A stretch of 64,000 bases of DNA from Selaginella moellendorffii (lineage: Eukaryota; Plantae; Lycopodiophyta): contig NW_003314358.1 in assembly GCF_000143415.4 (NCBI RefSeq), positions 605,109 to 669,108 of the forward strand, given 5' to 3'. The position numbers and the translations under genes are program-made. Below are positions 25,196 to 56,171 of this stretch, one piece after another (positions within the stretch are counted from its first letter, which is position 1; each line of letters begins with the position of its first letter). The notes under the pieces are model-generated. The model was not told the origin of the DNA. It searched no databases and saw only the letters and a list, made by a program, of their open reading frames with translations.

Positions 25196-26962
25196 TCAAA
25201 GTCGAAGTTTTGGGGAATTCTTCAAGTCCCATTCGCTCGAGTGTTGGAGAATGTTGGCCATGAGCACGTACGCAGCTGAGTTGCAAGGATCGAGCTCCAG
25301 TATGCTTCCGTATGCGGCCCGACCAACGTCGACGTTTTTCCACTTGTGACAGGCGCCGAGAACACTCATCCACAAGCTTGGTGTGGGCGAGGCACCGGAC
25401 ATCCCCCTCAGTACTGCCACTGCTTCGTCGAGAAGGTTAGCTCGGCCTAGGAGGTCCACCAAGCAGCTATAGTGCTCGATCCCTGGAGTGATACTGCGCT
25501 GCGTCATAGCTCTAAACACCTCCTTCCCGTTCTCCACATGTCCGGCGTGTGCACACGCTGTGAGAACCGTAAGATAGGTGACCGAGTCCGGAGCTAAACT
25601 CGTCCGACACAGAGCTTCGAATGCTTCCAGCACTTCTGTGATCTCTCCCTGATGGCTATAGCCTGCTAGCAGCGCGTTCCAAGTTACCAAGTCGATGCTT
25701 GCCATGGACTCGAAAACTTGCCGCGCTCGATTCATACTTCCAGACTTCCCGTAGAAATCCACCAGAGAAGTTGCGACTCCCGGCTGGCCTTCTACTCCAG
25801 CAGTGCATATCTTGGCATGAATTCTCCTCCCAGCTCCGGAAAAACCTTGGCTTGCGCAAGCCTTGAGCATGGCCACAAAAGTTGCTGGATTCGGAGCGCA
25901 GCCATCACCCTCCATTTTCTCAAAGAGCTCTAGCGCCATCTCTGCCTGTCCACCTTGTGCATAGCCCAGTATCATCGCCGACCACGAAACCACGTCTCGG
26001 AAAGACCTCTTCATCCTCTGGAAAATGCTCCAAGCCTCTCCCAGGCTTCCGCACTTGCAGTACATATCCACGAGAGAGCTCGCGATCGAAGCATGGAGCT
26101 CGAATCCAGAGCCTCGAATCTGACAGTGCAAAGCTCGCCCGATCTCCAAGCTCTTGAGCTTCACCACCTTTCCATCCACAAGCTCGCCTTCTTCGACCAC
26201 CGCTAGAGCCGCGCAAGCTTTTATCACTGCGAGGTAAGTCACTCGGTTTGGAGCGCAAGGCATCCTCCGGAAAGTTTCTAGCGCCAACTTTGCATCGCCA
26301 GCCTCGGCAAATCCCAAGATCATCGCACTCCACGAGACGACGTTGCGTTCTTCCATTCTTCCAAACAAATCCCGGGCATCCACCGAGCTCCCACACTTCC
26401 AGTACAGATCCACCAGCGTGCTGGCCACGAACAAGTCCGATTCCAATCCGTTCTGGCAAATCTCCAAGTGAAGAGCTCGAGCGGTTTCGAGTGCCTGTTC
26501 TCGAGAGTTCTCGCAAGTCGCGGCACAAGCCTTGAGAGCCGCCAAGTAAGTGACGCGATTTGGAGCGATGGAATCGTCGCTGTCTTGCTTCATTCTCTGG
26601 AAGAGTCCTAGTGCCAAATCCCCTTTCCCATTCTCGGCGTAGCCCAGGATCATCGCACTCCAAGACACCACAGAGCGATCTTCCATGGCATCGAAAACCT
26701 CGCGAGCCTCGTCGATGCTGCGGCATTTCGCATACATAGTGACCAGGGCGCTCGCAATGTCGGCGTCGATGCCATCGTCGCCATGGAAGCCCGGGGATGC
26801 CCGGCGATTCTTGATGATGTAATCGTGGATTCGCTTACCGGACTGGAAATCCCCGACGCGGCCGCACGCCTTGAGCGCTGCCGCGATGATGGATTTCGTC
26901 GGGGAGGAGCCCTCGCTCTGGATCCGGTCGAAGGCGTGGATTGAATCCCTCACGCTGCGCAT
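25196..26962 (-). CDS. PLS-class PPR protein with E domain
   Basis: Intronless P-L-S triplets (VVSWSAMILGYA / PNRVTYLAALKAC / LVDMYCKCG) and E domain HYSCLVDLLGRAN...AYVLMANI; telo-box just upstream. Confidence 0.92.
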   Translation of the reverse strand: MRSVRDSIHAFDRIQSEGSSPTKSIIAAALKACGRVGDFQSGKRIHDYIIKNRRASPGFHGDDGIDADIASALVTMYAKCRSIDEAREVFDAMEDRSVVSWSAMILGYAENGKGDLALGLFQRMKQDSDDSIAPNRVTYLAALKACAATCENSREQALETARALHLEICQNGLESDLFVASTLVDLYWKCGSSVDARDLFGRMEERNVVSWSAMILGFAEAGDAKLALETFRRMPCAPNRVTYLAVIKACAALAVVEEGELVDGKVVKLKSLEIGRALHCQIRGSGFELHASIASSLVDMYCKCGSLGEAWSIFQRMKRSFRDVVSWSAMILGYAQGGQAEMALELFEKMEGDGCAPNPATFVAMLKACASQGFSGAGRRIHAKICTAGVEGQPGVATSLVDFYGKSGSMNRARQVFESMASIDLVTWNALLAGYSHQGEITEVLEAFEALCRTSLAPDSVTYLTVLTACAHAGHVENGKEVFRAMTQRSITPGIEHYSCLVDLLGRANLLDEAVAVLRGMSGASPTPSLWMSVLGACHKWKNVDVGRAAYGSILELDPCNSAAYVLMANILQHSSEWDLKNSPKLRL

Positions 26963-27939
26963 TCCATTAAACAAAAGTTAGGGTTCTTTCAAAGAATTGA
27001 CCGTTCAAACTTGAGATTTTTCATGTGGTTTCAATAGAAGCATTCTTTAACTACCATTGATCAGTTAAGAACTTTTTGCTCTTTTAGTAAATTGGTTCTT
27101 CCAAGCAAACACTAAGAGAATAAGAAATGCTAAAAAAAATTATTTAGTTAAAACATAAAATTTTATTAAAACTTTGTTACTAATTAAAGGTTAAAATAAG
27201 AATTAAATCTAAATTAACAAATTAGTTCATGTTTGATTTTTTATATTTGTTTTTAAGGAGCGTTAATAACTTAGAATGCAATAAATCCCAAATAAAAATC
27301 GTCATCGATGCGGCACTTTGCTCGGAATCTGCAATATAGTCAACAAAAGCAAAGACTATATTGCATAAAAGCGCTTTAAAATTTGCAACACAGCCAACAA
27401 AAATAAAAATTATATCGCGTGAAGGCGCTTCCAGATCTGTATCATAGTTACCAAGTGTAAAAGGGCCTTAACATCCTATATGCAAAAGAGAAAATTAAAT
27501 GTAAATGCGTTCATTCAATATTTAGTGTTTTTTTACAAGAATATTAAAATAAAATTAATTTTTAACTTTAAGATTAATTAATATTTAAAATAAAATGAAA
27601 AACTTTAGTTCAGAAAGATATTAAAATGATGTGTAAGATATCATTAAAAAATATCAATGATATAGCAAATATAAAAATTAACATTCTAGAAACGTTTATT
27701 GTTATAAAATTCAGAAGAAATAAATCTACTACTATAAGGAGCAAACGCCGAACTTTGTGGGCCGCCGGATCTGGCCAATCACAGCCGTCCGATGGAGGGT
27801 AACTGTAAAGGGGTTATTTCTTTAACCACGTGTTAGCGAATAATCGTGCTGATGTTTGCTCCCGGCCAATGGGAGGCGGCCAAGCCGCATGGGGCAGGAG
27901 AGGAAGGCCCAGCAACACGTGGCACATGCAAAGTGTTGA

Positions 27940-29550: not shown

Positions 29551-31547
29551 CAAAGAAGTCCAATGAAACCAGTTCCAGGAGACATTTTGTATCTCCCGAA
29601 CTATTTTTTGCTGTATATCCTGATGAAAATGGCAGTAAGAGGTGTGAGAAAAATTCCAAGTTGAACTAACTCACAGTGAAACCCTGCCTCCCCCCCACCG
29701 CAATATAGACTGTAGTTCAAAGTTCGTTACTTGAGAACAAAGAGTGAAAACTAAGTCATGATGAGAACTCCCCAATTCTTATGAACCGCACAAATCTAAC
29801 TTAATTTTTCACAGGCATTTTGCACAGGCATCTGCCTATCCTCACTCAAAAGTAGTCACTTTACTTTTAAACCACATTAGATCAAAAGTGCAAAAGATCA
29901 AAATGTTGAAACCATATTAGAAGTTAAAAAGTAAGGCTTATTACTAGATGATTAGGGTTTCTCTCAAACAGACATCATTTTTTGGCTAAATCACAACTGT
30001 GGGGGGCTTTAACAATAAAAGTACATATTTATATTTTTATATGTAGCCTTAGTTATTTATAATTATCAAAAAAACTACGATAATGTATGTAGTATTTGAT
30101 TAAACAATAATATTTTAAAATATTTTTACTAATTTATTAGTATATAATACTATGGAATATAATATTTGAAATTATTATATATATCTATAAATAATTATTA
30201 GGTTGATTGGATCTGGGTAGTAATATATTAATGTTCATAAAAACTTATTGTTTTATATTTTGAGTAAAACTTATAATTAATTAATGTCTTGCAGTAATTA
30301 TTCTCTTTTATTTGTTTTTAATTTTTTATTTGTCAATTTGTTTTCTAAATATATTCATATTTCCAAATAATAATTTGTATATAATATTTTTATGAATGAA
30401 TATTTTATCTTATTTATGCCTAGGAATATATTTTTTCTAAATAGTTATATTAATCAAGTGTACAAGAATTTATTTATTTATTCATCTAGCATTTTCTAGG
30501 CATAATTCTCTCAATCAAAGTGGAATATAATATTTGTTGTTTAAATACTATTCTAATTTAGTTTTTAATATATTAAAAAATCAAAAAAATATTTTGCTAA
30601 TTACACAGCATATGCTGGGCAAGTGCTAGTATTTACATAACAATGTTATATAATATTTAAAAAAAGGTAAATTTTAAATTGGTTTCTACTTTATTTAACA
30701 TCTTTTTGCTATGGTGGTGTACAGTAAAATCTTATAAGTAAAATTAACTTTTCTTTACACCCAAATAAAAACAATATTTAAAATAAAATGTAAAATTTAG
30801 CTCAAGATGAATTTATAAGGTATTTTCTCAAAAATAAAATTTAAATATTAACATTATTTTCTTATATAAAATGTTTTGGATAAAAAATTATTTTTCTCTC
30901 ATAATTATTTATATTAGTCAATTTTTAACTATTAATATAAAAAATTCAAATTTATATAAAACTTTAAACTAGTTCATTTTTACATTACCTTTGGAGCTCA
31001 CAAGAAGTGTTTTGTCAATTTACTTTTTAAGTAATTTTTAAAGAATATTGAATGAAGTATTAAAATTTATATTTATAATAATATAAATAATATGCAAAAA
31101 TGTGAATATTTTAAATAAGCTTATTTTATCTTCTTGCTAAATTTATATGAGTATAAAAAATTAAAAAAATCAATGTCTATATCATTATAAACTTCAAATA
31201 CAATAATTTTTCTATATTATAAATTGCAAAAAGTTAGTTATATGTCACCATAAATTTAAAATGTATTACTTTTTCACACTATTAAGTTTTTTCTCATGAA
31301 TATTTATATAATTCTAGATGGTCAATAACATATAAATATATATAATAATTTAATTTTTGTTTATATCTTTAAATATATTATATCAATTATAGTAGATAGA
31401 TTTTAATTATTTAAATTTTAAATATTAAAAATATATAAAATATTAAACTAGCTAGTTTTAATTTCTAGTTTTTACTTTACCTTCAGAGTTAATAAAAGTT
31501 ATTTGATCAAATATTTGAATAATATATAAATAATATAATATTTTATA

Positions 31548-31722
31548 TGTGAGGGCCAAGTGTACAACTATGATGCCATATACTAATATTAGCGTAGTGA
31601 GATTTGGTAGCTGTCGGATTGATTTTAATCCGGACCATTCACTCTTGTATATAAGATAGAGTTTTTGGGCTAATTGATATTCACATTTTCTGTATTCTCA
31701 TTTCATATTCCAAACACTTATA
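31548..31722 (+). repeat. 5' LTR (about 175 bp)
   Basis: Starts TGTGAGGGCCAAG; homologous to 48754-48927 and, inverted, to about 37358-37521. Confidence 0.85.
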
Positions 31723-34700
31723 TTGGTGGAGTTGAGGGGCACCTTTGATTGTTCCTGAGGAGTGATTGAATTTGGGATTTTAGTTTAGATCTAACTTTTG
31801 CATTGTCTAAATCTAACTTTTTCCATTTCTTTTTTTTTGTTTTTTCTTTTTAAAATTTTGGTTTAGATCTAGCATTTTGCATTGCCTAGATCTACCATTT
31901 CTTTTTAGCTTTTTGTCATTTCTCTTGTTTTGCTCTTTCTTCGTTCATCTTCATGGTAGATTAGCAATCTCCTCCTTTGACTTTAGAGTAGCAATTGGTA
32001 CAATTGCTTGATGCTATGTGTTTGCAATTGAACAACTAAACTCAATTGATGGCAGCCTTCACGGCACATTCTGCTCTTGGTGCCAATCCTCACGTTCAAC
32101 TGAAGTTCTTTCTCAGGAATCTTGGGGATGATGTGTACCATTGGTTTGATCACTTCACGGTGATTGCCACATATCATTATTGGGATGATGCTCCACGTTT
32201 GCATGAGTTTCCCATGTGTCTTCAAGGGACAGCGTTGTAGTGGTACAATGGTTTGAGCGCAGCCACTCGTGGGGATTGGAGTGTTCTCCTAGATGTTGTC
32301 AAACCCGCCTTCGGACATGCCGACGATTGTGATGATGCCTTCCAACAATTGCATCATCTTTGCCAAAGGCCATCTGAGTCGGTGATGCAATTTAGTGTTT
32401 GTTTCTAAAGTCTTTTGCTTCGTGCGGAGCCAAATATGTCAGAGTTAATCAAGTTAGAAATCTTGTGGCCAGCACTTCATCAAAATCTTGTTGTTGGACT
32501 TGTGCATGCACTTGCTCTCGCCACCCTTGACAATGCTCTTTGCTTGGCACAACGTTATGAGACGTCGTTTCTTTCACTTCTCACTGCACATCCTTTAGCT
32601 CCACTTCCTATGGGTGATGGTCCTATTCCAATGGAGGTTGATGCTGCTGCTGCTCGAGTCCAAGGATAAGGGCGAGGACGTGGTCATGGCCGTGATGGTC
32701 ACTATTAGGCGTGTGATGAAGTTAGTCATACTTAATAGACATTGTTGGCATTTTCCGGATTGGCGACCTCCATTTTCTGGGTGGAGACTTTGGCGTCAGC
32801 AATGTCCTGTTGGTGCTGCTGCAGTGGAAGGTTTAGACACCAAGATGCATCCGGGAAATGAGGAGTCGCGCGAGTAACGGAGGGACCTTACGCAAATAAG
32901 TTAGTGACCCCTCTATCTTTCTTTCGGGAGTATTATCAAAGGGTTCACTCAGCACCGGTTTATCCAGTGTTTACTTTCCAAGCTTGTTTTTATAACAAGA
33001 AGTCTCCTATTATTCTCTCTATGTTGGTTGATACAAATTTGAGTTTATCTTCTATTGCTCAACCTGTTGCCACACATTGCTATCTACACTTGCGTCGTGC
33101 AGTAGAACCAGTTTTCATTCTTTATGGCATCGGCCATACACATGCATGTGCATGGGATGAGGTGGACCTAGTTGTGCATGTAGGTGATTTTGAGCTTGAG
33201 TTGCAGTCATTGTGGGTGGTGCCGAGTCAAGCTTTTGACCTCATTCTTGGTATGGATTGGTTGCAGCGCAATTATGTCAAATGTGACTTTGAAGCTTCTC
33301 CCCCTTGTCTCATACTTCTTTATGTTTTATCCATTCCTCTAATTTCTATACCTCTTCATCCCTCTACTTCTACCTTTGCTTCCATTACTTTTGTTCCCCC
33401 ACTATTTCTTCCTGTATTTCTGTTTTGTTTTGCTCTTCCCTTTTCTGATCCCTCTAACGATCTTTATGTTGCAGTGGTTGACTGGCTCATGAAAGAGTAT
33501 TCTGATCTCTTTGAATTTGACCTATCGTTTTGGGGCCAAGATTGCCACATATCATCCGACTTCAACCGGGAATGCTCATCCAATCAAAGTTCCTGTTCAT
33601 CATCAGTCACCCAAGGAGATCAAGATTTTACATGCAAACATCAAGGAGATGTTGGAGAAGGGTGTTATTCAGAAGTTGCGAAGTCCTTGGGCATGTGAAC
33701 CTCATCTTGTGACGAAGCCTGATGGGAGTATTCGTTTTTGCATTGACTATTGTCTATTAAACGAAGTGATGATCCAAGATGTGTACCCTTTTCCTCACAC
33801 TGCTAATCTCTTAAATCGTCTGGGGCAAAGTCGTTGATTCACTAAGCTAGATCTTACTTCTAGGTATTAGCAAGTACCAATGGCTGAAGAAGATATTCTT
33901 AGCTTTTCGTACACCATTTGGTTTATACGAGTTCTTGGTGATGCAGTTTGGTTTGAATAATGCTCCAGCAACTTTCCAGCGGATGATGGACGAGGTTCTT
34001 TGCAATATAAGTGTTGGATTGGCTACGCAATGTTGGTTTAAAGTTGAAGCAGTTGAAGTGCATGTTTGGGTCCAAGGACACAACTTATCTTAGGTACCGT
34101 ATTTCTCGTGATGGTTTGCAAGTTAATCCTGACAAACTTGTGGCTGTTCTAAAGTTCCATACTCCGAAGTGTGTGAATGATGTGCAATGTTTCCTTGGCA
34201 AGATGCAGTATCTCGGTCATTTTGTGCATTATCTTTCTGATCGCACTGCACCGTTGCGAGCATTGCTGAAGTCATCAACATTATCTTTCATTTGATCTCC
34301 GGATTGTGAGCAGGTGTTCATGGATCTCAAAAAGCTATTGACAACTCCTTTGGGTTTGGCATATCCTAACTACACTCGACTTTTTATTTTGCGCGTGGAT
34401 GCTTTTGACATTGGTCTTGGAGGTGTGTTGATGCAAGAAAGCTCGAGTGTGCCTGGTCAGCGCCATCCCATTGTGTATATAAACTATACATTACAATTAG
34501 CAGAGATGAACTACTCCACGATAAAGAAGGAGTGTTTAGTAGTAGTATGGGGTTTCAAGAAACTTTATGCATATCTACATGGTTCTCAGATGTTATTTGA
34601 AGGTGACCATGCTGCCGTTACTTCATTATTGAAGCGAAAGAACTTGGTTTGTCATACTACTTGGTGGGCTTTGAAGTTTCAGATGGGTTTGAGAATTCTA

Positions 34701-35355: not shown

Positions 35356-36095
35356 CGTTTGGGAGTATCATCTTTCTTTTGGGAGTATCATCAAGGGGTT
35401 CACTTTGCACTGGTTCATCCAATGTTTACTTTCCAAGCTCATTTTTATAACAAGAGGTCTTCTATTCTTCTCTCCATGTTGGTTGATACAGGTTCGAGTT
35501 TATTTTCTATTGCTCGACCTGTTGCCACACGTTGTCGTCTACACTTGCGTCGTGCGGCGGATCCAGTTTTCATTCTTTATGGCAACGGCCGTACACATGC
35601 ATGTGCACGAGATGAGGCGGACCTAGTTGTGCGTGTGGGCGATCTCGAGCTTGAGTTGCAGTCGTTGCGGGTGGTGCCGAGTCAAGCTTTTAACCTCATT
35701 CTTGGTATAGATTGGTTGTAGCGCAATCATGCCAAGTGTAACTTTGAGGCTTCTCCCCCTTGTCTCATACTTCTTTATGTTTCATCAATTCCTCTCACTT
35801 TTGTACCTTTTCGTCCTTTTACTTCTACCTCTACTTCCATTACTTTTGTCCCCCCACTATTTCCTCCTATGTTTCCATCTTGTTCTGCTCTTCCCTTTTT
35901 TGATCCCTTCGGTGATCTTTGTGTTGCAGTTGTTGATCGGCTCATGAAAGAGTGTTCTAATTTCTTTGAATTTGACATATCGTCTAGGGCCAAGATTGCC
36001 ACATGTCATCCAACTTCAACTGGGAATGCTCATCCAATCAAGGTTCCTGTTTGTCGTCGGTCACCCAAGGAGATTAAGATTTTACGTGCAAACAT
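35356..36095 (+). repeat. Internal duplication of the protease region of the gypsy element
   Basis: Closely matches about 32924-33645. This copy keeps LVDTGSS, whereas the first copy reads LVDTNLS. Confidence 0.85.
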
Positions 36096-36099
36096 AATA

Positions 36100-37521
36100 A
36101 AACTTGGCTTTGCCACATGACATAATTATAGATGACAATATATGGCAATAGGTCAAACAATAGAAGATAAACTTGACTTTATATCAACTAATATAAAGAG
36201 GTTAATAAAGGATATTTTGTTATAAAAATGAATTTGGAAAATAAATATTAAATAAATTGGTGTTAAGTGAACTCTTTAATAATACTTTAGAATGAAAAAT
36301 GAAGGGGTCATTGATTTATTCATGCAAAGACCCTTCACTACTTGTATGATTTTTCATTTCCCAAGAAAATCTTTATATCAAGATTTTCCACCACAATAAC
36401 TTTAATAAAACATTATTAATGCCAAGGCCTCCACCCAAAAAAAGAGGATGCTAATTTGGAAAATACTAATAATACCAATATATGTGGCTAACTTTATCAC
36501 ATATCTAGCAGTAAACATTATAGCCATAACCATCATCGCCCTTATCCTTGAATATGGGTAACAACAACATCAACTTTTATGAATAATATCATCTCTAATG
36601 ACACACTTTGATTTACACAATGATATGAAATATTGTATTTCCCATTTGTCGATGTACATACTTTAACTCCACTTCATGTGAAAGGTGGCTAGAGAAAGTA
36701 TATACACAAGTCCCATAAGATCTTGACGAAATGCTAACCACAACATTTTTAATTTGATTTGCTCTAACATATTTAACTCTACATAAAACAAAAGGCTCTA
36801 GAAGTGAATGCTAAATTGCACACTTGGCTCAAATAACATTTAATAGAAATAATGCAATTGTTAAAACACATTATCACAATTATCAATATGTCCAAATATA
36901 TGGTTAATATGTTCAAATGAAGGCTCCAATCCAAATGAATGGCTACCTTTAAACCATTATACCACTATAATGTTATCCTTTGGAAACATATGGGAAACTC
37001 ACACAAATATTAAGTATTGTCCCAAAAATGATAAATAGCAATCATTGTAAAATGAGAAACTAATAATATATATCATCTTTAGAATTTCTATGAAAGAATT
37101 TCTGCTAAACATGAGGATTGGTAGACCGAATAGAAAGAGCTACATCATACATTATAAATGCCACTATCAATTGAGTTTAATTGTTCAATTACAACCATAT
37201 AGTATTGAGTAACTGCATTAATTATTACTCCAAAGTTAAAAAAGAAGGAGGTTACCACTTTATCATGAAAAAAAATAAATTACAAGAATAAAAGAGATCT
37301 AAATAATATAAAATCTAAATCAAAAACATTCCTTGGGCACAATTAAAGTTATCTCTAATGTGAATACATAAAATATGGAAATAGAATACATAAATATGCA
37401 TATTAGATTAGCCCAAAAGCCTTAACTATATATAGGAATAAGTAGTTTAAATTAAAATTAAATCAATATCTATCAAAATCCTACTATGTTAATATTAGTA
37501 TATGCATTACTTGCACCTCAT
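36100..37521 (-). mobile_element. Older inverted copy of the same gypsy family (5' LTR and gag remnant)
   Basis: The reverse complement of about 37358-37521 matches the LTR, and 36900-36990 matches gag at 32220-32300; strongly AT-shifted. Confidence 0.75.
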
Positions 37522-37985
37522 AAACCAAAAAAAGAAAAAAAATTTGAAAGTTCCAAAAACTTAAAATAAATCTGAATTCAGATTTTATTATTTAGCAAGC
37601 ACAAAAGCCCATTTTTACAGCAATTTAAATAATATGGTATAAATTTGATCATCCATTTTAGCACATTTGATAGAAAATAGTTATTAGAAAAATCACTTTT
37701 AAGTCTACCACTTTACTAATTACATAAGATTATATTAACGATTTTTGTTTTGCCCATTTTATAAAAAAAATGTATGGAAAAAATATTTTATTACCCTTAA
37801 TCAGGAAACCAATTGTTCCTTTGTGCCACCTTTGCAAATTACAAAAAAACTGAGGGAGAAATGTGATTCCTACCCGCGGCAGCTGGATCGAATTACAATT
37901 CTCTAGCTCCTCCCATTGATTGAGTTACTTGAGAGAAGAAATATTTTCCCAGTTTTAGGGTTTGTGAGGAGGTAGGGCGAGGGAA

Positions 37986-40587
37986 ATGGCGCCCAAGAGG
38001 CAATCTGCGCGGCTAATGCAGCAGAGGCTGCCAGAGGAGGAGCAAATGAGAATAGCGCTGGCAAATTCCATGAAGACTTTCAAGGAAGAGCAACGCCAAT
38101 GCGCCGATCTCTCTCACTTGGACGACGTCAAGCTGGACGCTACGCAGCGCACGACGCAGGTTTTTCGTCGCAGGAAGCGTCCACGCCAGGTACGCCTCTG
38201 TTTGAGATCTTGTTGTCTAGAGGACAGTTCTTTAGATTTCTCCATTCTCGGTTTTTAGACACTGCCAGGTCCTTTGGAGTAGATTGTTGGCGTGATCGAT
38301 TTCGATGTTTTGCAGGAGGAGGACGAAGAGCCGGCGGTCTCAAACGGTGGAAACGATGAAAATTCTGGCAAAAGCCGGTATGTAGCTACATCTCGCAAGC
38401 ACTTGAGCAAAAACTTATTGTTGTTTACGCAGGACTATGGACGAGATTGTTGAGAGCACTGAGATCTTGAAGGTCGGTCTCATGAATTTTTTCTTTCTTT
38501 CTTTGCTGATGTGCTGCTTACAGGACGCGCCGGCTAAAGCCCGTTCTGCCGGAAAATCCAAGGTGACTCGGTCTTTTTCTTTCCTGGGTGATCCTTGATT
38601 TTTTCTTTTTTTCGCTTGTGTTCTAGCAGTCGAAAACAACTAAGCGCCAGAAATCCCTCAAGCGTCTGATACCCTCAACCAAAAAGTAGTCGGAGTGATG
38701 TTTTGGTGCCAAGCAAGCTGATGCCATTGTGTTGCAGAAAAAAGAAAAAGGACCTCGTTAGGAGTTACTTTGGATTCTCTGCGGTATAGTCAAGCGTTCG
38801 TTGGCTTTCAACTAAATGTTTTATTTGCAGCCTGGAAAACTAGAAGAGCCATCGCCTGAAGGTTCCAATGAGGTGAGCCATTTACATTCTTGTGGTATGT
38901 AACAGCTGCCAGTTCCAGGAAGTTCTTTTAGTTGACGATGAAGACCATCTACAAGATAGCGAACAGCAATTGAAGAGGTAATGTCGGGAAGCTTTGCTAG
39001 TCACGTTTTTCACCCTTTTAAGATCAGATGTGGAGTGAAATTTGCATATCCCTCTCGGTACGTATTTGTTATATAGCCACTTAGCCTTCTGACTTCTCCA
39101 ATCTTTAGTAATGATCCGGAAGCAGTAGAAGTCGAAGAACACCATTTGCAATGTCTAGCGGAACACGAGTATGTCAACGACACAATTATTGATTTGTATA
39201 TCAAGTACGTTTCGCAAAGTTCTTACTGCTAAGCCCCAAGTTTATTTGTCACAGGTACATTCTTGTATCTCAATCCACAGAACTGGAGAGGTTTCACGTT
39301 TTTAACAGCTTTTTCTTCAAACGGCTCGCTCAAGCAGTTTGCGACGAGGTGAGGCTAATTATCCTTTTTCATGTAAGAGATCATCTTTGTAGGACTACGT
39401 TGAAAGCGTTGGCAAGCTACGGAAATGGACGAAGGGCGTTGACATCTATGACAAAGCCTACGTTTTGATGCCTGTCCATCAGCAGTGAGTTTGATTTTTT
39501 CGCTCTGTGGTTTCTTCTTGACACTTTCGCAGGATGCATTGGAGCCTTGTTGTGGTTTGTTTTTCAGGCCCGAAGCCTGGATGCCATATACTTCACCTTG
39601 ATTCTATGCAAACTGGGCACGTTAGTCGTCCTATTTATGAGGTTGTTCGCCGGTACGTGAATTCTCGGGTTTTGTTTGCCATTGCCTGGTTATTTGACAG
39701 GTACTTGGCGGCCGAATGGATTTCTCATGGTGGTGAGAACAAGGACTTTAAGAATGTTCATGAAAGGAAAGTAAAGGTATGCACGAGTCTCTTGCAACTT
39801 TTAAAGAGTCTGTCGTTCTTCTTTCTCTTCTGCAGGTGCCAAAGCAGCAAAACGAGTACGACTGTGGCCTTTTCATGCTTCATTACATTCAGCAGTTTTT
39901 GTCAAAGGCTCCAGCCAGTTTCAGCGACTCCATGGTCAAGGACATGGTAGTAAGTTTTTTGTGAAACACGAGTTCTTATCGTGAGCTCCTTTTGTTTTGC
40001 AGCATGCATGGTTCTCACTAGCCGAAGCATCCAAACTTCGGACCACCATCCGGGACATCACGGACAAGATATTCTTCCCGAAAGAAGGTAAAGAGGAACC
40101 GGCGTTGGATTCGGTCGCTATCGACGGGGCTACGAAGCCAGAGTCAGAACAGGATCCTTCAGCTGCATTCATCAACGAAGCAACTGTTGAAGGCTCGAAT
40201 GGCGATAACACCACCCAGCAAGCAGTGACAAATGATACCACCCAGCAAGCAGTGGCGAATGATAACACCAACCAGCAAGCAGTGACGAATGATCCAGCAA
40301 GTGTTCCCAGCAGTGAGGAGAGACGCGATGATGATCCAGCAAACGTTCCCAGCAATGAGGAGATACGCGATGACCATCCAGCAGGAAATCCTAGCAGCGA
40401 GGAGATACTTCCAGCTAGCACTGGCAACGATCCGGTAAACAATTCCAGCACTGAGGAGATAGTTCCAGCCAGCACTGGCAACGATCCGGCAAACAATCCC
40501 AGCACTGAGGAGATAATCCCCGGAAGAAGTGATCCAGATGGGATGGTTCCGGGAGAAAGTCACGAAGATCATCCAGCGAGCAGCTAG
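37986..40587 (+). CDS. Ubiquitin-like-specific (SUMO) protease, peptidase C48 (ULP), multi-exon
   Basis: YVNDTIIDLYI, FHVFNSFFFKRL, RKWTKGVDI, HWSLVVVC, LHLDS and QQNEYDCGLF (His/Asp/Cys triad); acidic repetitive tail. Confidence 0.9.
40200..40520 (+). repeat. Imperfect coding tandem repeats in the ULP C-terminal tail
   Basis: DNTTQQAVTN x3 followed by about 5 copies of DPAN.PS.EE. Confidence 0.8.
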
Positions 40588-44855: not shown

Positions 44856-46545
44856 TCAGGGACTGCTCGTCTTCATCCTCCCCGGAGAGGCGGCAGAGAT
44901 GACGTTCTTGATGACTGCAACCGCTGGAGTATAGTCACTGCTGCTGCTGCCGCCGCCGGTTACGCAAGAGCTCGTGTCTGGAGGAAACGGAAAATGCATA
45001 CTTAACAGCAGTGGAGCTTGCCTTTCCTCCAGCAGCTCGGGAATCCTCTTCTTAAAACCTCTGCTTTTCAAGCTTCGAGCAACTTTGCGCCTGTAAACAC
45101 ACGCACAAACTGAGGAAGATCGAAACGAGAAAGGAGTGAATAGACATACCAGTATCGTATCGTTGCCATGTGAAACCACCACTGCGGGCCACCATTGTGA
45201 GTGCGAGCTAAAGTTTCCAAGTCGTCGAACTCGAGTGACCACGGACAGTATCTAAGCCAGTAGTTCACAGCAGTTCGCTCGGCGTATTCCACGTCGTCGC
45301 ACAGCTCGTACTTGGCACCGCTTGGATCTTTTTGCCACCAAGCATCTTCGTGGTAATCTGTGCTGCATTAGAAATCCACCAAAACCCGCTTCAATTCTCA
45401 CTCTTGCCTGCTAGATCAGTGTCAAATAATATCTATTTAACATCGACTAGCCAACGAAGGAGAGGAGATATTTTACCTGATTTGCAAGGGACCAATGCTT
45501 CGACCACCATCTCCAATCGGCGCAGGAACCATGAAACTCGATTCTATGTCTCGCATCGCGTCCAAGAGAAGCCTGTGCCTTTCACGGTACTCGTCCACAT
45601 CTGCCATGCATGGGTGAGATAAAGCTTTCCGGAAAGTGGCCACTTTCAAGGGAAAAAAAACGAGATTTTTCACTTAAGACCTTGGAAAGCAATGGATGGA
45701 AGTACGAAAGATAAGGTTATCAGAAAATCCAGACAAAAGCTGACCCAGGAAAAATGAAAAGGATGGATTCGCAAGAAAAAGAAAAATCATCGCCTGAAAA
45801 GATCGAGCATTTGCTAGATCTCATGAAAAGAAAAGGAAAATAAAGAGATATCAAACGCAATCCAATGGATGGAAGGCATGAAAGATAAGGCTATCAGGAA
45901 ATCCAGAGAAAAGCCGAGCCAGGAAAAAAAAGGATAGATCCACAAGAGAATGGAATTCATAGGATCGAGCATTCTTAGACCTGATGAAAAGAAAAAGGAG
46001 CAAGCAAAGCAATGAGTGCCAAAAGAATGCATGGAAACTCCCTACCAGGAAGGAAAAGAAAAAACCATGGACAGAGCTATCATACCTCTGGGAGGAGGGA
46101 ACACATCAAAAAAAGTAGCATTGGCACTTCCAAATGCTTTGGTTCTAGCCCTGACCTCGCGAAATACCTGGCGGCGCTGGATCCACTGGGATGGGCAGTG
46201 AGGAACGAAGAGAATGTCGCCAGGGAACAAGAGATCCAGCGTCGCCAGATGCAAATTGAGCTCCTGGAGCTCCTCCACCAGAAGCCCTAGCCCCTGCGCG
46301 ATCTCCCAGGCCGTGTCACCGGCCTCGACGAGCAGCGGCTCCAGGCGCGCGCCGTGGTTCCACACGCGCCGCGGCAGCCAGGGGCGCGGAGGAACTCGCA
46401 GCGTGGCGCCGGCGAGAATGAGATCGCTATCGAGGCCATTGAAGGACTGGAGACGGCGCCAGTCGACCCCTAGCGATTCCCCAAGCTTCCACAGCGTGTC
46501 GCCCTCCTCTACGAGCAGCGCTGCCGATCCATTCGCCATTGCCAT
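44856..46545 (-). CDS. 2xLysM + i-type (destabilase-like) lysozyme domain protein, about 343 aa, 4 exons
   Basis: Exons 46545-46086, 45600-45477, 45362-45150 and 45090-44856 join in frame with GT-AG introns. LysM motifs VEEGDTLWKLG...LRVP and VEAGDTAWEIA...LFVP; lysozyme motifs IES, GPLQI..Y..DA, ARTHNGGP and T..YW.KV. Confidence 0.82.
45690..45975. repeat. Diverged direct repeat (2 x about 120 bp) in the first intron of the LysM-lysozyme gene
   Basis: CAATGGATGGAAG...GATCGAGCATT occurs at about 45690-45812 and about 45863-45973. Confidence 0.75.
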
Positions 46546-46744
46546 GAGATCACGAGAAATTGGAATATCCCTGCGGTTTAAAATTTGGCATCTCGAGGAG
46601 CGCTTGAGAATATCCGGTGTGCTTTAAATATAGTAGATCTTTGAGTATATTCTGAGTTTTACGAAGCTTTCTTTAGCATTAAACTCTTATAACTTTTTGA
46701 ATTACAAAAGTTTTAATACTTTTAATGAGAAATTATTATAGACG

Positions 46745-46770: not shown

Positions 46771-46884
46771 GAAGATATTTTATATTTCCATTTATCCTTC
46801 TTACTTAAAAAGAATTTATTATTTAAACATGAATAAATAATTACTATTGTATATACTATAAATAAAAAAAATCAAGGTGAAAAC

Positions 46885-46989
46885 ATATATACATACATAC
46901 ATACATACATATATATATGTATATATATATGTATATATATGTATATATATATATATATGTATATATATGTATATATATGTATATATATG

Positions 46990-47020
<31 letters not shown>

Positions 47021-47061
47021 GTATATATATGTATATATATGTATATATATGTATATATATG

Positions 47062-47094
<33 letters not shown>

Positions 47095-47187
47095 GTATAT
47101 ATATATATGTATATATGTGTATATATATGTATATATATATATGTATATATATATGTATATATGTGTATATATATATATATATATATA
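46885..47187. repeat. Compound (TA)n/(TACA)n/(TATATATATG)n microsatellite
   Basis: About 300 bp of TA repeats interrupted periodically by G. Confidence 0.97.
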
Positions 47188-47214
47188 AAATATATAATAT
47201 ATGGTTAATACTAT

Positions 47215-53882: not shown

Positions 53883-56171
53883 ATGGATCGCCATTTCCTG
53901 CTAGAGAGCATCCGTTCTTGTAAGAGCTCGGCATCACTCAAAGTGATCCAATCATCTCTACCAATCTACTTCCAGAGGGATTCGTCCCTCTCGAACCAGC
54001 TCATCCAGAGCTTCGGGAGACTTGGGTGCTGCAAAGATGCCCGATCCGTGTTTGACGCCATGGAGTGGCGGGATTGTTTTTCATGGGACTTCATGCTCGC
54101 CGCCTACATTCGCAGTGGGGATTTGGAGGAATCAAAGCGATTCTTTTACTCCATGCCCGATCCAAGCCTCGTGTCGTGGACAGCGATCATCACCGCAACT
54201 GCCCAAAGAGAAAACTTGCGACGCGCGAGGCATTTCTTCGATGCTATGCCGAAACGAGACGTGATCTCCTGCACGGCGATGATCAAGGCGTGTTCCAACG
54301 GCGGAGACCTCGATCAAGCGCTGGAAGTTTTCAATTCTATACTTTACAAAGATCTGGTAGCGTCAAACGCAATGCTAGGCGCGGTTGCCCGTTTGGGGCA
54401 TTTTGAAGAGACTGTCTCATTCTTTCAGTCTTTGCCTTTACACGACCTCTATTCTTACAACACAGTGTTGGCAAAGGCTGATAACGTAAACGAGTCCAAA
54501 TATTTGTTTGACAAACAACCCGAAAAAGATCTTGTGACGTGGAACTCCATGATTGCGGCATATACCAAAGCCGGGGATCTTGGTAGCGCAAAGTCAACGT
54601 TTGACAATGCTCCCTTGTGGAATCTAGTCACTTGGAATTCCATGTTGGTAGGGTATATGCAAGATTGCCAAGTGGATGTGGCAAAGATAATCACTTATGA
54701 GATGCCAGAGTGGGATCTTTTCACTTGGAACGCCACACTAGCGGGATACTTCCAAAATGGGAATCTTTCTAATGCGGCAATGTTGTTCCACCAAATGCCC
54801 AAGAAAGACATTGTGACATGGAACTCCATGGTGTGTGGATATTCCCAGAGCGGGCATTTGCAAGATGCCGAGAAGATACTCCTTGCCATGCCTGAGCATG
54901 CAGTGGTGACGTGGTCGGCAATGCTGGATGCGTACGCACGAAATGGCCACGTGGACCGTGCCAAGCAGATATTTGAGAGATTTCGTACGACTCCGTACAG
55001 CCTAGCATTTGAGAATGGTATGCTAGTAGCGTATGCCCAAACTGGGAATTACATAGAAGCAAAGATTCTTTTTGATAGCATGGTACAGAAAAGCATGGTA
55101 ACCTGGAATGCCATGCTAGATGCGTGTTCCTTGGAAGAAAAGTATGATCACGTAGAAAAAATGTGGGATTCTATGCCGTATTGCGATCTAATATCATGGA
55201 ATATACGTCTGTCTACGTATGCCCAGCAAGGGGATCTGGAGAAGTCAAAGAGGTCTTTTGATTCCATGCCTGTCAAGGACATTGTCTCTTACACTTCAAT
55301 GATCACAGCTTACACCCGAAACCTAGAGCTTGAGAAAGCATGGACGCTCTTTGAATCCCTTCCCTACCACAATCTAGTTTGCTGGAATGCCATTCTTTCA
55401 GCCCATGTACACGGACGAGACATTGTGCGGCTCCAATTGTTGTTTGATCAAGCTCCTCAAAAAGATTTAGTTTCATGGAATCAACTTCTGGCAGCATATT
55501 CCAGATTGGGGGCTCTAGAACACGCAAATGCCATCTTTGAAAAAATGCCGGAGCATGACACTCTGTCTTGGACTGTTTTAAGTACAGCGTTTGGTGTGAG
55601 CGGGTACCTAGAGTACTCCAAACTCTTGTTTTATTTCATGCCAGAACGTAGCATAGTAGCGTACAATTCGATGCTATCGTCGTATTCTAGATTGGGCCAC
55701 GTTGAATTTGCGAAAGCCCTGTTTCTTGCAATGCCAGAATGGAACCTGGTTTCTTGGAGCGCTCTACTCGCGGCATATACCCAAACTGGGCATCATGCGG
55801 ATGCGTCGAGATTATTCTTGGAGCTCTCGCTGTTCGAGATTCCAGACTCTATGTGTTTTGTACTAGCCCTGGTGTCAGCGAGCCGCGTTGGTACCGTCAT
55901 GAATGGACGATGGAGATTCGTTTCGATGTGTGCCGACTTTGGAGTGACTCCGACCAAGCAGCACTACTGCTGCATTGTGGACGCCTTGAGCCGGGCGGGA
56001 TACTTGAAAGATGCCGAAGATGTTCTCAAGGAGATGCCGTTTGAGGCCGAGAATCTGGACTGGAAGTGCTTGCTTTGGAGTCGCAGAAATCACAAGTACA
56101 AGCCAATGACCCCTGTTATAAGCCTAGACTCCATGGATGGGGCTGCATACATGCTAGCCTCAAGGTTGTAA
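53883..56171 (+). CDS. PLS-class PPR protein (SS-repeat array, shortened E domain)
   Basis: 762-aa intronless ORF of repeats of about 31 aa; HYCCIVDALSRAG; short E domain ending AAYMLASRL. Confidence 0.92.
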   Translation: MDRHFLLESIRSCKSSASLKVIQSSLPIYFQRDSSLSNQLIQSFGRLGCCKDARSVFDAMEWRDCFSWDFMLAAYIRSGDLEESKRFFYSMPDPSLVSWTAIITATAQRENLRRARHFFDAMPKRDVISCTAMIKACSNGGDLDQALEVFNSILYKDLVASNAMLGAVARLGHFEETVSFFQSLPLHDLYSYNTVLAKADNVNESKYLFDKQPEKDLVTWNSMIAAYTKAGDLGSAKSTFDNAPLWNLVTWNSMLVGYMQDCQVDVAKIITYEMPEWDLFTWNATLAGYFQNGNLSNAAMLFHQMPKKDIVTWNSMVCGYSQSGHLQDAEKILLAMPEHAVVTWSAMLDAYARNGHVDRAKQIFERFRTTPYSLAFENGMLVAYAQTGNYIEAKILFDSMVQKSMVTWNAMLDACSLEEKYDHVEKMWDSMPYCDLISWNIRLSTYAQQGDLEKSKRSFDSMPVKDIVSYTSMITAYTRNLELEKAWTLFESLPYHNLVCWNAILSAHVHGRDIVRLQLLFDQAPQKDLVSWNQLLAAYSRLGALEHANAIFEKMPEHDTLSWTVLSTAFGVSGYLEYSKLLFYFMPERSIVAYNSMLSSYSRLGHVEFAKALFLAMPEWNLVSWSALLAAYTQTGHHADASRLFLELSLFEIPDSMCFVLALVSASRVGTVMNGRWRFVSMCADFGVTPTKQHYCCIVDALSRAGYLKDAEDVLKEMPFEAENLDWKCLLWSRRNHKYKPMTPVISLDSMDGAAYMLASRL

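What the first reader, a model, noticed from the sequence alone, without database searches (positions are those of the whole stretch)
44856..46545. Intron-containing plant gene fusing two LysM domains to an invertebrate-type lysozyme domain
Seen: four exons splice in frame into LysM-LysM-linker-[LLDAMRDIESSFMVPAPIGDGGRSIGPLQISTDYHEDAW...YELCDDVEYAERTAVNYWLRY...LETLARTHNGGPQWWFHMATIRYWRKV]. Established: i-type lysozymes/destabilases carry a catalytic Glu in an ES motif with an Asp about 12 residues later, then GxxQI, ARxHNGGP and YWxxV; LysM binds peptidoglycan and chitin; plant muramidase activity normally comes from GH18/GH19 chitinases. Here the Glu and a candidate Asp (+11) are present, but the domain has only 2 Cys and no clear signal or transit peptide. 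Inference: a Cys-poor, possibly bacteria-derived peptidoglycan hydrolase that has become a spliced plant gene. It could act in antibacterial defence or in turnover of the plastid peptidoglycan that lycophytes and mosses retain. I cannot confirm novelty or horizontal origin without searches.
Basis: partly seen in the sequence, partly recalled or inferred. Interest (0 to 1): 0.92.

Follow-up and report, generated by a model that had tools for sequence, protein, structure and literature searches.

The report
Spikemoss LysM-fused, cysteine-poor i-type lysozyme gene
This is a real four-exon Selaginella gene that joins two sugar-binding LysM modules to a cysteine-poor lysozyme domain of the "invertebrate" type; it belongs to an old, unstudied green-plant family seen from green algae to lycophytes but not in ferns or seed plants, and databases already auto-label it "lysozyme".

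Summary
Four minus-strand exons with GT..AG borders splice into a 343-aa protein identical to RefSeq XP_024518981.1 (Selaginella moellendorffii LOC9651419). It has two LysM domains (Pfam E 1e-20), a lysozyme-like domain and a disordered tail.

The lysozyme call holds. A family profile hits only i-type lysozymes in the PDB (E 5e-21 to 5e-18), and the catalytic Glu173 and Asp184 align. A pLDDT 94 model matches leech destabilase best (Z 13.3, TM 0.73). The domain has 2 Cys, and no ortholog has a signal peptide, transit peptide or membrane segment.

This is not a recent bacterial import. The LysM-fused family forms one clade whose branching broadly follows the species tree, from chlorophytes through streptophyte algae and bryophytes to lycophytes. 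No fern or seed-plant member was found. The nearest non-plant relatives are over 2000 small exported proteins, 36-48% identical; the named ones come from Planctomycetota. A LysM-less paralog family with IQ motifs also exists.

The best reading is a LysM-targeted, intracellular muramidase. A role in plastid peptidoglycan turnover is attractive but unproven.

UniProt already auto-names these proteins "lysozyme", and I found no paper on them. The scan noted the same architecture on another piece of this genome, probably the other haplotype.

The parts
44856..46545 (-). Whole coding span of Selaginella moellendorffii LOC9651419 (343 aa, 4 exons, 3 introns)
   Evidence: The spliced translation is identical to P0172 / XP_024518981.1.
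46086..46545 (-). Exon 1: start codon, LysM1, LysM2, the linker and the first residues of the lysozyme domain (FFDVFPPPR); it ends in phase 1
   Evidence: The donor is CCAGAG|GTATGA. Pfam LysM gives two stretches, E 1.4e-20. An in-frame TAA lies at 46626-46624 upstream.
46390..46518 (-). LysM domain 1 (residues about 10-52)
   Evidence: The best Pfam PF01476 stretch covers residues 12-52. The AF2 model shows the beta-alpha-alpha-beta pattern at 9-50. Foldseek matches LysM structures 4uz2 and 4b8v.
46201..46344 (-). LysM domain 2 (residues about 68-115)
   Evidence: This is the second Pfam LysM stretch. AF2 places strands at 68-72 and 111-115 and helices at 79-85 and 90-96. G76 and P115 are invariant in the family.
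45601..46085 (-). Intron 1 (485 nt, GT..AG), which contains a two-copy direct repeat with about 170-nt spacing
   Evidence: copies at 45706-45754 and 45880-45928, 90% identical.
45477..45600 (-). Exon 2: N-terminal helix of the lysozyme domain and the catalytic loop (…LLLDAMRDIESSFMVPAPIGDGGRSIGPLQI)
   Evidence: Splice sites are. E173, S175, G183, D184 and SIGPLQI are invariant in 22 family members.
45542..45544 (-). Codon GAA for Glu173, the predicted general-acid catalytic residue
   Evidence: It aligns with the Glu of CKMESG, CKVEGC and CKLESG in i-type lysozymes 3ab6, 8bbu and 2dqa. It is invariant in 66 relatives.
45509..45511 (-). Codon GAT for Asp184, the predicted second catalytic carboxylate
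   Evidence: It aligns with the Asp of KMDMG, GMDVG and RMDVG in 3ab6, 8bbu and 2dqa. It is invariant in the plant family and at least 90% conserved across 66 relatives.
45363..45476 (-). Intron 2 (114 nt, GT..AG)
45150..45362 (-). Exon 3: core of the lysozyme domain (STDYHEDAW … LARTHNGGP … TIRYW)
   Evidence: phmmer with this exon alone hits i-type lysozymes in the PDB (E 0.005) and recovers the family among 1.84 billion representatives.
45091..45149 (-). Intron 3 (59 nt, GT..AG)
44856..45090 (-). Exon 4: last helix of the lysozyme domain (RKVARSLK), then a low-confidence and probably disordered C-terminal tail, then the TGA stop (44858-44856)
   Evidence: pLDDT is below 50 for residues 287-343. 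The tail is only loosely conserved, apart from an H-x-P-F-P motif in land plants.
45051..46110 (-). Genomic span of the i-type lysozyme-like domain (residues 146-279, interrupted by three introns)
   Evidence: The domain model has pLDDT 93.7. Its best structural match is destabilase 8bbu (Foldseek TM 0.73; VIA Z 13.3).

Best explanation
The locus is the nuclear gene LOC9651419 of Selaginella moellendorffii. It encodes a soluble 343-aa protein made without any signal peptide, transit peptide or membrane segment. The protein has two N-terminal LysM modules, a cysteine-poor catalytic domain homologous to i-type (destabilase-family) lysozymes, and a disordered tail.

Shown: the exon structure, the domain identities, the lysozyme fold, conservation of the Glu173/Asp184 pair, and membership of a family inherited vertically from chlorophyte and streptophyte algae to bryophytes and lycophytes.

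Inferred mechanism: the LysM pair holds a GlcNAc-containing glycan strand, either peptidoglycan or possibly a chitin-like oligomer. The catalytic domain then hydrolyses the beta-1,4 MurNAc-GlcNAc bond, with Glu173 as the acid and Asp184 as the second carboxylate, as in animal i-type lysozymes. The lack of disulfides fits an enzyme that folds and works in a reducing intracellular compartment rather than outside the cell.

Inferred role (weakest step): a housekeeping task on an endogenous or regularly met peptidoglycan. The most likely case is breakdown of plastid-envelope peptidoglycan or of the glycan fragments it sheds; the next most likely is clearance of bacterial wall material inside the cell.
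For: - **Gene model:** it is identical to the RefSeq protein, with all splice sites canonical.
- **LysM:** 73 bits against a cut-off of 20.9, in two copies.
- **Sequence homology:** the Selaginella domain alone hits destabilase 8bbu at E 7.6e-7. The plant-family profile reaches 8.7e-9. The 66-sequence profile reaches 5e-21 (3ab6), 4e-20 (8bbu) and 5e-18 (2dqa), with nothing else at E <= 0.01, and the Glu and Asp columns align.
- **Pfam:** 61 of 66 relatives hit Pfam Destabilase.
- **Structure:** the domain model has pLDDT 93.7. The top six Foldseek hits are all i-type lysozymes, TM 0.69-0.73. VIA gives Z 13.3 to 8bbu.
- **Conservation:** E173, S175, G183, D184 and SIGPLQI are invariant in 22 green-lineage members, and catalytic domains are 46-69% identical from Picocystis to mosses. 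This points to strong purifying selection on a working active site.
- **No targeting signal:** orthologs from Mesostigma, Chlorokybus, Picocystis, Riccia and mosses all start directly with LysM, and the Selaginella protein has no presequence or membrane segment.
- **Phylogeny:** the family is one clade (100/96) with roughly species-tree order.
- **Precedent:** DipM (LysM + M23) is a plant LysM-bearing peptidoglycan hydrolase found in glaucophytes, charophytes, moss and Selaginella moellendorffii. Chloroplast division in Selaginella nipponica is sensitive to peptidoglycan-synthesis inhibitors (PMC4015805).
Against: - No enzyme activity has been measured for any member.
- The Selaginella domain itself is below Pfam's Destabilase threshold (16.3 bits against 26.2).
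- Structural similarity to GH23 lytic transglycosylases is nearly as high (MltC Z 11.3, MltE 10.7), so the chemistry (hydrolysis or lytic transglycosylation) is not settled by fold.
- For the plastid role, no ortholog has a transit peptide, yet plastid peptidoglycan lies between the envelope membranes.
- No fern or gymnosperm member of the LysM-fused family was found, although those lineages retain peptidoglycan synthesis (PMC9434261, PMC12681378).
- A published phylogenetic-profile screen for genes that track the peptidoglycan pathway reported a different LysM protein, PPASP, and its text never mentions lysozyme (PMC4815162).
- The trebouxiophyte Myrmecia bisecta has a member, and I could not check whether it has the peptidoglycan pathway.
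Confidence: 0.7

Rival explanations
1. The same protein serves mainly in immunity. On this reading it is an intracellular or unconventionally released antibacterial (or antifungal) lysozyme. It digests the walls of invading or engulfed bacteria, or trims peptidoglycan or chitin fragments that LysM receptors sense.
For: Animal i-type lysozymes are defence and digestive enzymes, and the fold and the catalytic pair are shared with them. LysM binds both peptidoglycan and chitin, and plant LysM proteins are best known from immunity (PMC2728734; PMC9434261). The failure to find a member in ferns despite their plastid peptidoglycan fits a role that does not depend on plastids.
Against: The protein has no signal peptide in any ortholog, so it does not enter the usual secretory route to the apoplast. 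In the named genomes I saw one protein cluster per species and no lineage-specific expansions, and the catalytic domain is 46-69% identical over hundreds of millions of years. Immune effectors usually diversify and change in copy number. Loss from the seed plants, which face the same microbes, is not explained.
Confidence: 0.25
2. The catalytic domain works as a lytic transglycosylase with GH23-like chemistry, producing 1,6-anhydro-MurNAc, rather than as a hydrolytic lysozyme. The protein would then be a functional analogue of bacterial MltD (SLT plus two LysM), with the domains in reverse order.
For: VIA-align gives Z 11.3 to MltC, 10.7 to MltE, 10.1 to Slt and 7.6 to MltD, close behind destabilase at 13.3. 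Two of 66 relatives give weak Pfam SLT hits. MltD combines the same two kinds of module (8rhf).
Against: Sequence profiles hit only i-type lysozymes in the PDB. The second carboxylate (Asp184), which lytic transglycosylases lack, is invariant in the plant family and at least 90% conserved in 66 relatives. Foldseek ranks all six i-type chains above any GH23 enzyme.
Confidence: 0.1
3. The domain is no longer a glycosidase. It would act as a glycan-binding or regulatory module, or as an isopeptidase like that reported for leech destabilase, in a cytosolic process unrelated to peptidoglycan.
For: The location is cytosolic, where no peptidoglycan is known. That points to cytoskeletal or signalling contexts. 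The closest solved structure is destabilase, a protein reported to have two activities.
Against: Both catalytic carboxylates and the substrate-cleft motifs SIGPLQI, HNGGP and YW are invariant or nearly so. That pattern is typical of active enzymes, not pseudoenzymes. Two LysM modules argue for a GlcNAc-type glycan ligand.
Confidence: 0.08
4. The gene is a recent horizontal acquisition by lycophytes, or bacterial contamination of the assembly.
For: The nearest non-plant relatives are bacterial-type proteins, 36-48% identical in the domain.
Against: The gene has three spliceosomal introns and sits among PPR, UDP-glycosyltransferase and TPX2-domain genes in the same window. It is present on both haplotype scaffolds. 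Orthologs occur in chlorophytes, six streptophyte-alga lineages, liverworts, mosses and another lycophyte, and form a clade that broadly follows the species tree and is separated from the bacterial sequences at 99/96.
Confidence: 0.02

Closest known systems
Animal i-type lysozymes and leech destabilase (PDB 8bbu/8bbw, 3ab6, 4pj2_C, 2dqa; Pfam PF05497; CAZy GH22 i-type, the CAZy assignment from my own knowledge)
   Same: These are homologous catalytic domains (profile E 5e-21 to 5e-18) with the same fold (TM 0.69-0.73, Z 13.3). The catalytic Glu and Asp align, as do the GPxQI, HNGGP and YW motifs.
   Different: Identity is only 25-28%. The plant domain has 2 Cys, whereas the animal enzymes are disulfide-rich (many of their Cys are visible in the alignments). 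It has no signal peptide, is fused to two LysM modules and a disordered tail, and is encoded in a plant nucleus.
Small exported Destabilase-family proteins of bacteria (named examples: Phycisphaerae and Planctomycetes MAGs)
   Same: These are the closest non-plant sequences: 36-48% identity over the domain, also Cys-poor, with the same VE(T/S)…GD.G..IGP.QI…LAR.HNGGP…YW motifs.
   Different: They are single-domain proteins of 115-220 aa with N-terminal hydrophobic leader sequences and no LysM. A 99/96 branch separates them from all green-lineage sequences. They are uncharacterised. I labelled the tree rows 'bacterial' from sequence features and from the few named records, not from taxonomy of every sequence.
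MltD-type lytic transglycosylases (SLT/GH23 domain plus two LysM; PDB 8rhf/8rhe)
   Same: They combine a lysozyme-fold glycan-cleaving domain with two LysM modules that dock on peptidoglycan. Structural similarity of the catalytic domain is Z 7.6 to MltD and up to 11.3 to MltC.
   Different: There is no significant sequence match, the domain order is reversed, and they are periplasmic lipoproteins with a single catalytic Glu. The plant protein keeps an additional invariant Asp.
DipM of plastid-bearing eukaryotes (LysM + LytM/M23), PMC4015805
   Same: It is a nucleus-encoded LysM-bearing peptidoglycan hydrolase found in glaucophytes, charophytes, moss and Selaginella moellendorffii. That overlaps the distribution of this family and shows that plants keep such enzymes for plastid division.
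   Different: Its catalytic domain is an M23 peptidase and its origin is cyanobacterial. Cyanophora DipM localises to the envelope intermembrane space at the plastid division site. The protein here is a glycosidase-type domain of non-cyanobacterial type and has no presequence.
Green-lineage paralog family ('family B'): N-terminal lysozyme-like domain with a long C-terminal extension carrying IQ motifs
   Same: It has the same Cys-poor Destabilase-type domain and is the sister clade of the LysM-fused family (99/88). It is also without a signal peptide.
   Different: It has no LysM and carries IQ calmodulin-binding motifs, with a weak DUF3490 hit in Spirogloea. It extends to the ferns Pteridium and Ceratopteris and the conifer Cryptomeria, where no LysM-fused member was seen.

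Membership tests
LysM domain (Pfam PF01476) | Profile match above Pfam's gathering score | tested here: met
   73.4 bits against a cut-off of 20.9, in two stretches. Foldseek matches the N-terminal half to LysM structures 4uz2, 4b8v and 5jcd.
i-type lysozyme / Destabilase superfamily (Pfam PF05497 in the broad sense) | Significant sequence or profile similarity to solved i-type lysozymes | tested here: met
   The single domain hits 8bbu at E 7.6e-7. The plant profile reaches 8.7e-9. The 66-sequence profile reaches 5e-21, with no other PDB family at E <= 0.01.
i-type lysozyme / Destabilase superfamily (Pfam PF05497 in the broad sense) | Match to the Pfam Destabilase model above its gathering score (26.2 bits) | tested here: inconclusive
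   The Selaginella domain scores 16.3 bits, E 0.012. However, 61 of 66 aligned relatives hit the model (best 2.5e-13), the Mesostigma ortholog scores exactly 26.2, and the bacterial relatives carry precomputed PF05497 hits.
i-type lysozyme / Destabilase superfamily (Pfam PF05497 in the broad sense) | Catalytic Glu, and an Asp about 11-12 residues later, ahead of the G-P-x-Q-I strand | tested here: met
   E173 and D184 are invariant in the family. They align with the Glu and Asp of 3ab6, 8bbu and 2dqa.
i-type lysozyme / Destabilase superfamily (Pfam PF05497 in the broad sense) | Lysozyme-like alpha+beta fold closest to i-type structures | tested here: met
   The model has pLDDT 93.7. The top six Foldseek hits are all i-type, TM 0.69-0.73. 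VIA gives Z 13.3, rmsd 3.6 over 115 residues to 8bbu.
Invertebrate i-type lysozymes in the strict sense (secreted, disulfide-rich animal enzymes) | Many conserved cysteines forming multiple disulfides | tested here: not met
   The domain has only C216 and C234. Most Cys columns of the animal enzymes are non-Cys in the plant and bacterial profile (alignments).
Invertebrate i-type lysozymes in the strict sense (secreted, disulfide-rich animal enzymes) | N-terminal signal peptide, giving an extracellular or digestive location | tested here: not met
   LysM1 starts at about residue 10, and no hydrophobic segment is present (maximum KD19 1.38). There is an upstream in-frame stop. Orthologs have the same N-terminus. 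No dedicated signal-peptide predictor was available.
Invertebrate i-type lysozymes in the strict sense (secreted, disulfide-rich animal enzymes) | Measured muramidase (and in some cases isopeptidase) activity | not testable with these tools
   This needs recombinant protein and lysis or zymogram assays.
GH23 lytic transglycosylases (Pfam SLT PF01464; MltD-like) | Profile match to the SLT domain | tested here: not met
   P0172 gives no SLT hit at E <= 10, and only 2 of 66 relatives do at E about 5e-4. The similarity is structural only, Z 7.6-11.3.
Plastid peptidoglycan machinery (functional grouping with Mur enzymes, PBP, DipM and PPASP) | Plastid or envelope targeting signal | tested here: not met
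   No ortholog has an N-terminal extension. No targeting predictor was available and no localisation data exist.
Plastid peptidoglycan machinery (functional grouping with Mur enzymes, PBP, DipM and PPASP) | Occurrence that matches lineages keeping the peptidoglycan pathway | tested here: inconclusive
   Members are present in streptophyte algae, bryophytes, lycophytes and some chlorophytes, and none was seen in seed plants. None was found in ferns or gymnosperms either, although these keep the pathway (PMC9434261, PMC12681378). The searches depend on shared words and on candidate length, and unnamed transcript contigs could not be assigned to taxa.

The most novel reading that the evidence does not exclude
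The green lineage took up a planctomycete-like, disulfide-free i-type lysozyme before chlorophytes and streptophytes split, and has kept it as an intracellular enzyme of organelle biology. On this reading the LysM-fused form, made without a presequence, is a so far unrecognised glycan-strand hydrolase. It would remodel the plastid envelope peptidoglycan, or clear the glycan fragments it sheds, in algae, bryophytes and lycophytes. The paralog with IQ motifs (described in an earlier scan note as carrying a kinesin tail) would link the same chemistry to cell division. Loss of the LysM form in euphyllophytes would then mark a change in how the plastid wall is handled.
Probability: 0.2. Interest if true: 0.75.

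Novelty: new variant of a known kind. Interest (0 to 1): 0.5.

Why it matters
"Invertebrate-type" lysozymes are treated as animal enzymes, and plant muramidase activity is usually credited to GH18 and GH19 chitinases. This work shows a well-conserved green-lineage branch of that family that is disulfide-free, lacks a presequence and is fused to LysM, and its closest relatives outside plants are bacterial-type proteins. It offers a concrete candidate that can be knocked out in Physcomitrium and Marchantia. That bears on an open question: which enzymes cut the glycan strands of plastid peptidoglycan in non-seed plants, and what happens to the fragments. If the role lies elsewhere, the gene is still of interest as a rare cytosolic lysozyme-fold enzyme whose substrate is unknown. 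The practical caveat is that the identification is not new to databases; only the function and the evolutionary picture are unexplored.

Tried and rejected
- **Pfam on single exons:** the lysozyme exons gave nothing. The domain is split by introns, so I recovered a full-length reference by searching protein representatives with exon 3.
- **Bacterial and archaeal genome scan:** only one locus came back (a Candidatus Buchananbacteria MAG, 31% identity), because the automatic peptide patterns were plant-specific. The cap then prevented a second scan, so bacterial taxonomy rests on the few named records.
- **Taxonomy of unnamed plant-like clusters:** looking up encoding contigs for P0156 gave only SRA and JGI sample ids.
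- **Utsunomiya et al. 2021:** this paper on moss peptidoglycan hydrolases is not held. My recollection is that it covers MltB, NagZ, LdcA and VanY homologs and no lysozyme, but this is unverified.
- **Literature searches:** searches for destabilase or i-type lysozyme together with plants, LysM, Planctomycetes or the gene identifiers found nothing relevant.
- **Rooting the tree:** this was not possible because no animal sequence was available as a stored reference, and I did not type sequences from memory.
- **Readings rejected:**
  - contamination or recent HGT (introns, plant neighbour genes, vertical phylogeny);
  - a flagellum-linked distribution (Closterium and Mesotaenium have the gene; that Zygnematophyceae lack flagella is from my own knowledge);
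  - a C-terminal tail anchor (no hydrophobic segment);
  - the 137-aa plus-strand ORF at 46214-46627, which is antisense to the GC-rich exon 1.
Full report
**1. What is in the sequence**

The feature lies on the minus strand. There are four exons: 46545-46086, 45600-45477, 45362-45150 and 45090-44856. All three introns have GT..AG borders, and the exons join into a 1032-nt reading frame.

The 343-aa product is identical to P0172 = XP_024518981.1, [quoted passage not shown]. The copy on the other haplotype scaffold (P0001, XP_024520083.1) differs at seven residues. The surrounding window carries three PPR genes, a UDP-glycosyltransferase fragment and a TPX2-domain ORF, so this is ordinary plant nuclear DNA.

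An in-frame TAA lies 27 codons upstream of the ATG with no start codon between. The protein has no hydrophobic segment (maximum 19-residue Kyte-Doolittle value 1.38). Its cysteines are at 117, 216, 234 and 308.

**2. Domain identities**

- **LysM:** residues about 10-52 and 68-115 are two LysM domains (Pfam 73 bits against a cut-off of 20.9). Foldseek matches them to LysM structures.
- **Sequence evidence for the catalytic domain (residues about 146-279):**
  - One exon alone hits i-type lysozymes in the PDB weakly (E 0.005).
  - The whole domain hits leech destabilase at 7.6e-7.
  - A profile of 17 green-lineage domains reaches 8.7e-9.
  - A profile of 66 green-lineage and bacterial-type domains reaches 5e-21, 4e-20 and 5e-18 against Meretrix lysozyme, destabilase and Tapes lysozyme, with no other PDB family at E <= 0.01.
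- **Catalytic residues:** in those alignments Glu173 and Asp184 fall on the catalytic Glu and Asp of the animal enzymes.
- **Pfam:** the Destabilase model scores the Selaginella domain below threshold (16.3 against 26.2 bits) but hits 61 of 66 relatives.
- **Structure:**
  - An AlphaFold model of the domain built on the 66-sequence alignment has mean pLDDT 93.7.
  - Its six best Foldseek matches are all i-type lysozymes (TM 0.69-0.73).
  - VIA-align, which does not depend on Foldseek, ranks destabilase first (Z 13.3). GH23 lytic transglycosylases follow (MltC 11.3, MltE 10.7, Slt 10.1).
- **C-terminal tail:** the last 57 residues or so are predicted with low confidence.

**3. The family and its history**

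*LysM-fused family.* Searches found LysM-fused orthologs in these groups:
- mosses: Physcomitrium, Ceratodon, Sphagnum
- liverworts: Marchantia, Riccia
- another lycophyte: Diphasiastrum
- streptophyte algae: Coleochaete, Chara, Closterium, Mesotaenium, Chlorokybus, Mesostigma
- chlorophytes: Picocystis, Myrmecia bisecta

UniProt auto-names many of them "lysozyme". No fern or seed-plant member appeared in either search of the 5.8-billion-protein collection. This is suggestive but not proof, because those searches need shared words and a compatible length.

*Paralog family.* A second family lacks LysM, has the lysozyme-like domain at the N-terminus, and carries a long extension with IQ motifs. 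It occurs in Mesostigma, Chlorokybus, Spirogloea, Closterium, the ferns Pteridium and Ceratopteris, and the conifer Cryptomeria.

*Bacterial relatives.* Beyond plants there are over 2000 small (115-220 aa), Cys-poor proteins with hydrophobic N-terminal leaders. The few named ones come from Phycisphaerae and Planctomycetes MAGs. They are 36-48% identical to the Selaginella domain, against 25-28% for the animal structures.

*Tree.* A maximum-likelihood tree of 70 domains gave these results:
- The green-lineage sequences are separated from the bacterial-type ones at 99/96.
- The LysM-fused family is monophyletic (100/96).
- The paralog family is monophyletic (99/88).
- Within the LysM family the order runs from chlorophytes to Mesostigma/Chlorokybus, Coleochaete, Zygnematophyceae and then land plants.

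That is vertical inheritance from an early green ancestor, not a recent transfer. The tree is unrooted, so whether plants received the domain from bacteria cannot be decided. The "bacterial" label on metagenomic rows is my inference.

**4. How it most likely works**

*Shown:* the architecture, the fold, the conserved catalytic pair and cleft motifs (E173, S175, G183, D184 and SIGPLQI invariant; HNGGP and YW nearly so), and the lack of disulfides and of any targeting signal in all orthologs.

*Inferred:* the LysM pair docks on a GlcNAc-containing glycan and the domain hydrolyses the beta-1,4 bond as a muramidase. Its disulfide-free build suits it to a reducing intracellular compartment. I put about 0.7 on this biochemical reading.

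*The biological role is much less certain.*

For a link to plastid peptidoglycan:
- The gene is ancient and strongly conserved, and the named genomes showed one protein cluster per species, which looks like housekeeping.
- Its distribution overlaps lineages where peptidoglycan is needed for chloroplast division, including Selaginella (PMC4015805).
- DipM is a precedent for a LysM-bearing plastid wall hydrolase with a similar distribution.

Against that link:
- The protein has no route into the intermembrane space.
- No member was found in ferns or gymnosperms, which keep the pathway (PMC9434261, PMC12681378).
- A published profile screen reported a different LysM protein, PPASP (PMC4815162).

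An immune or microbe-digesting role is the main rival. A lytic-transglycosylase chemistry and a non-glycosidase role are minor rivals.

**5. Comparison with what is known, and novelty**

The protein belongs to the broad Destabilase / i-type lysozyme superfamily. It fails two hallmarks of the animal enzymes in the strict sense: many disulfides and secretion. I therefore file it as a distinct Cys-poor branch shared by the green lineage and bacteria, here fused to LysM.

The identification is not new to databases (RefSeq model, UniProt "lysozyme"). An earlier survey of plant LysM architectures never mentions lysozyme or destabilase in its text (PMC2728734). My literature searches found no paper on plant members or on the gene identifiers.

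Earlier notes of this scan list three related items on other pieces of this genome:
- the same 2xLysM-lysozyme architecture, which I take to be the other haplotype copy seen;
- a lysozyme fused to a NACK-kinesin tail, which matches my paralog family;
- an intron-containing i-type lysozyme-like domain.

**6. Verdict**

This is a new variant of a known kind, of moderate interest (0.5). What keeps it interesting is the puzzle of an unstudied, presequence-less muramidase candidate in plants that still wall their plastids.

Noticed in passing
outside the window: P0036 (Spirogloea, 1356 aa), P0098 (Ceratopteris, 943 aa), P0099 (Cryptomeria, 589 aa), P0025, P0030, P0044, P0046, P0148: A paralog family in streptophytes has an N-terminal Destabilase-like domain and no LysM. 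It carries IQ calmodulin-binding motifs (Spirogloea E 4e-19, Ceratopteris 6e-6) and gives a weak DUF3490 hit in Spirogloea. It reaches ferns and a conifer. The Cryptomeria copy is on a long branch and appears to lack the catalytic Asp. An earlier scan note (s1-402649) reports a Selaginella gene of this kind with a NACK-kinesin tail.
   Followed up: partly
window 45706-45754 and 45880-45928 (also 45815-45834 and 45976-45995): Intron 1 of the gene contains a two-copy direct repeat with about 170-nt spacing, 90% identical. This looks like a local tandem duplication inside the intron.
   Followed up: partly
window 46883-47203: A long (ACAT)n and (TATATATATG)n microsatellite of about 320 nt lies roughly 340 nt upstream of the start codon, in an AT-rich stretch.
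   Followed up: no
window 8995-11217 (-), 25196-26974 (-), 53883-56171 (+): There are three long intron-less PPR-protein ORFs. The one at 25196-26974 gives a below-threshold hit to the E motif (25.7 bits against a cut-off of 27.3), the motif seen in organelle RNA-editing factors.
   Followed up: no
window 30001-32000 and 36001-38000: Two very AT-rich blocks have GC of 0.20 and 0.29, against about 0.45 elsewhere. They may be simple repeats or transposon remnants.
   Followed up: no
orthologs P0151 (Physcomitrium), P0162 (Closterium), P0014 (metagenomic chlorophyte-like): Some orthologs begin with M-G-x-x-x-S, which fits the N-myristoylation consensus. That would tether them to the cytosolic face of a membrane. 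The Selaginella protein (MAMANGS) and the liverwort proteins do not, so the feature is not conserved.
   Followed up: no
P0001 compared with the window protein, residue 176: The two Selaginella haplotypes differ three residues after the catalytic Glu (ESSF against ESSS). This position also varies between F and N in other species.
   Followed up: no
cluster of P0022: A protein labelled Diacronema (Pavlova) lutheri falls in a cluster at 90% identity or more with Picocystis salinarum. This suggests cross-contamination of one of the two data sets rather than a haptophyte ortholog.
   Followed up: no
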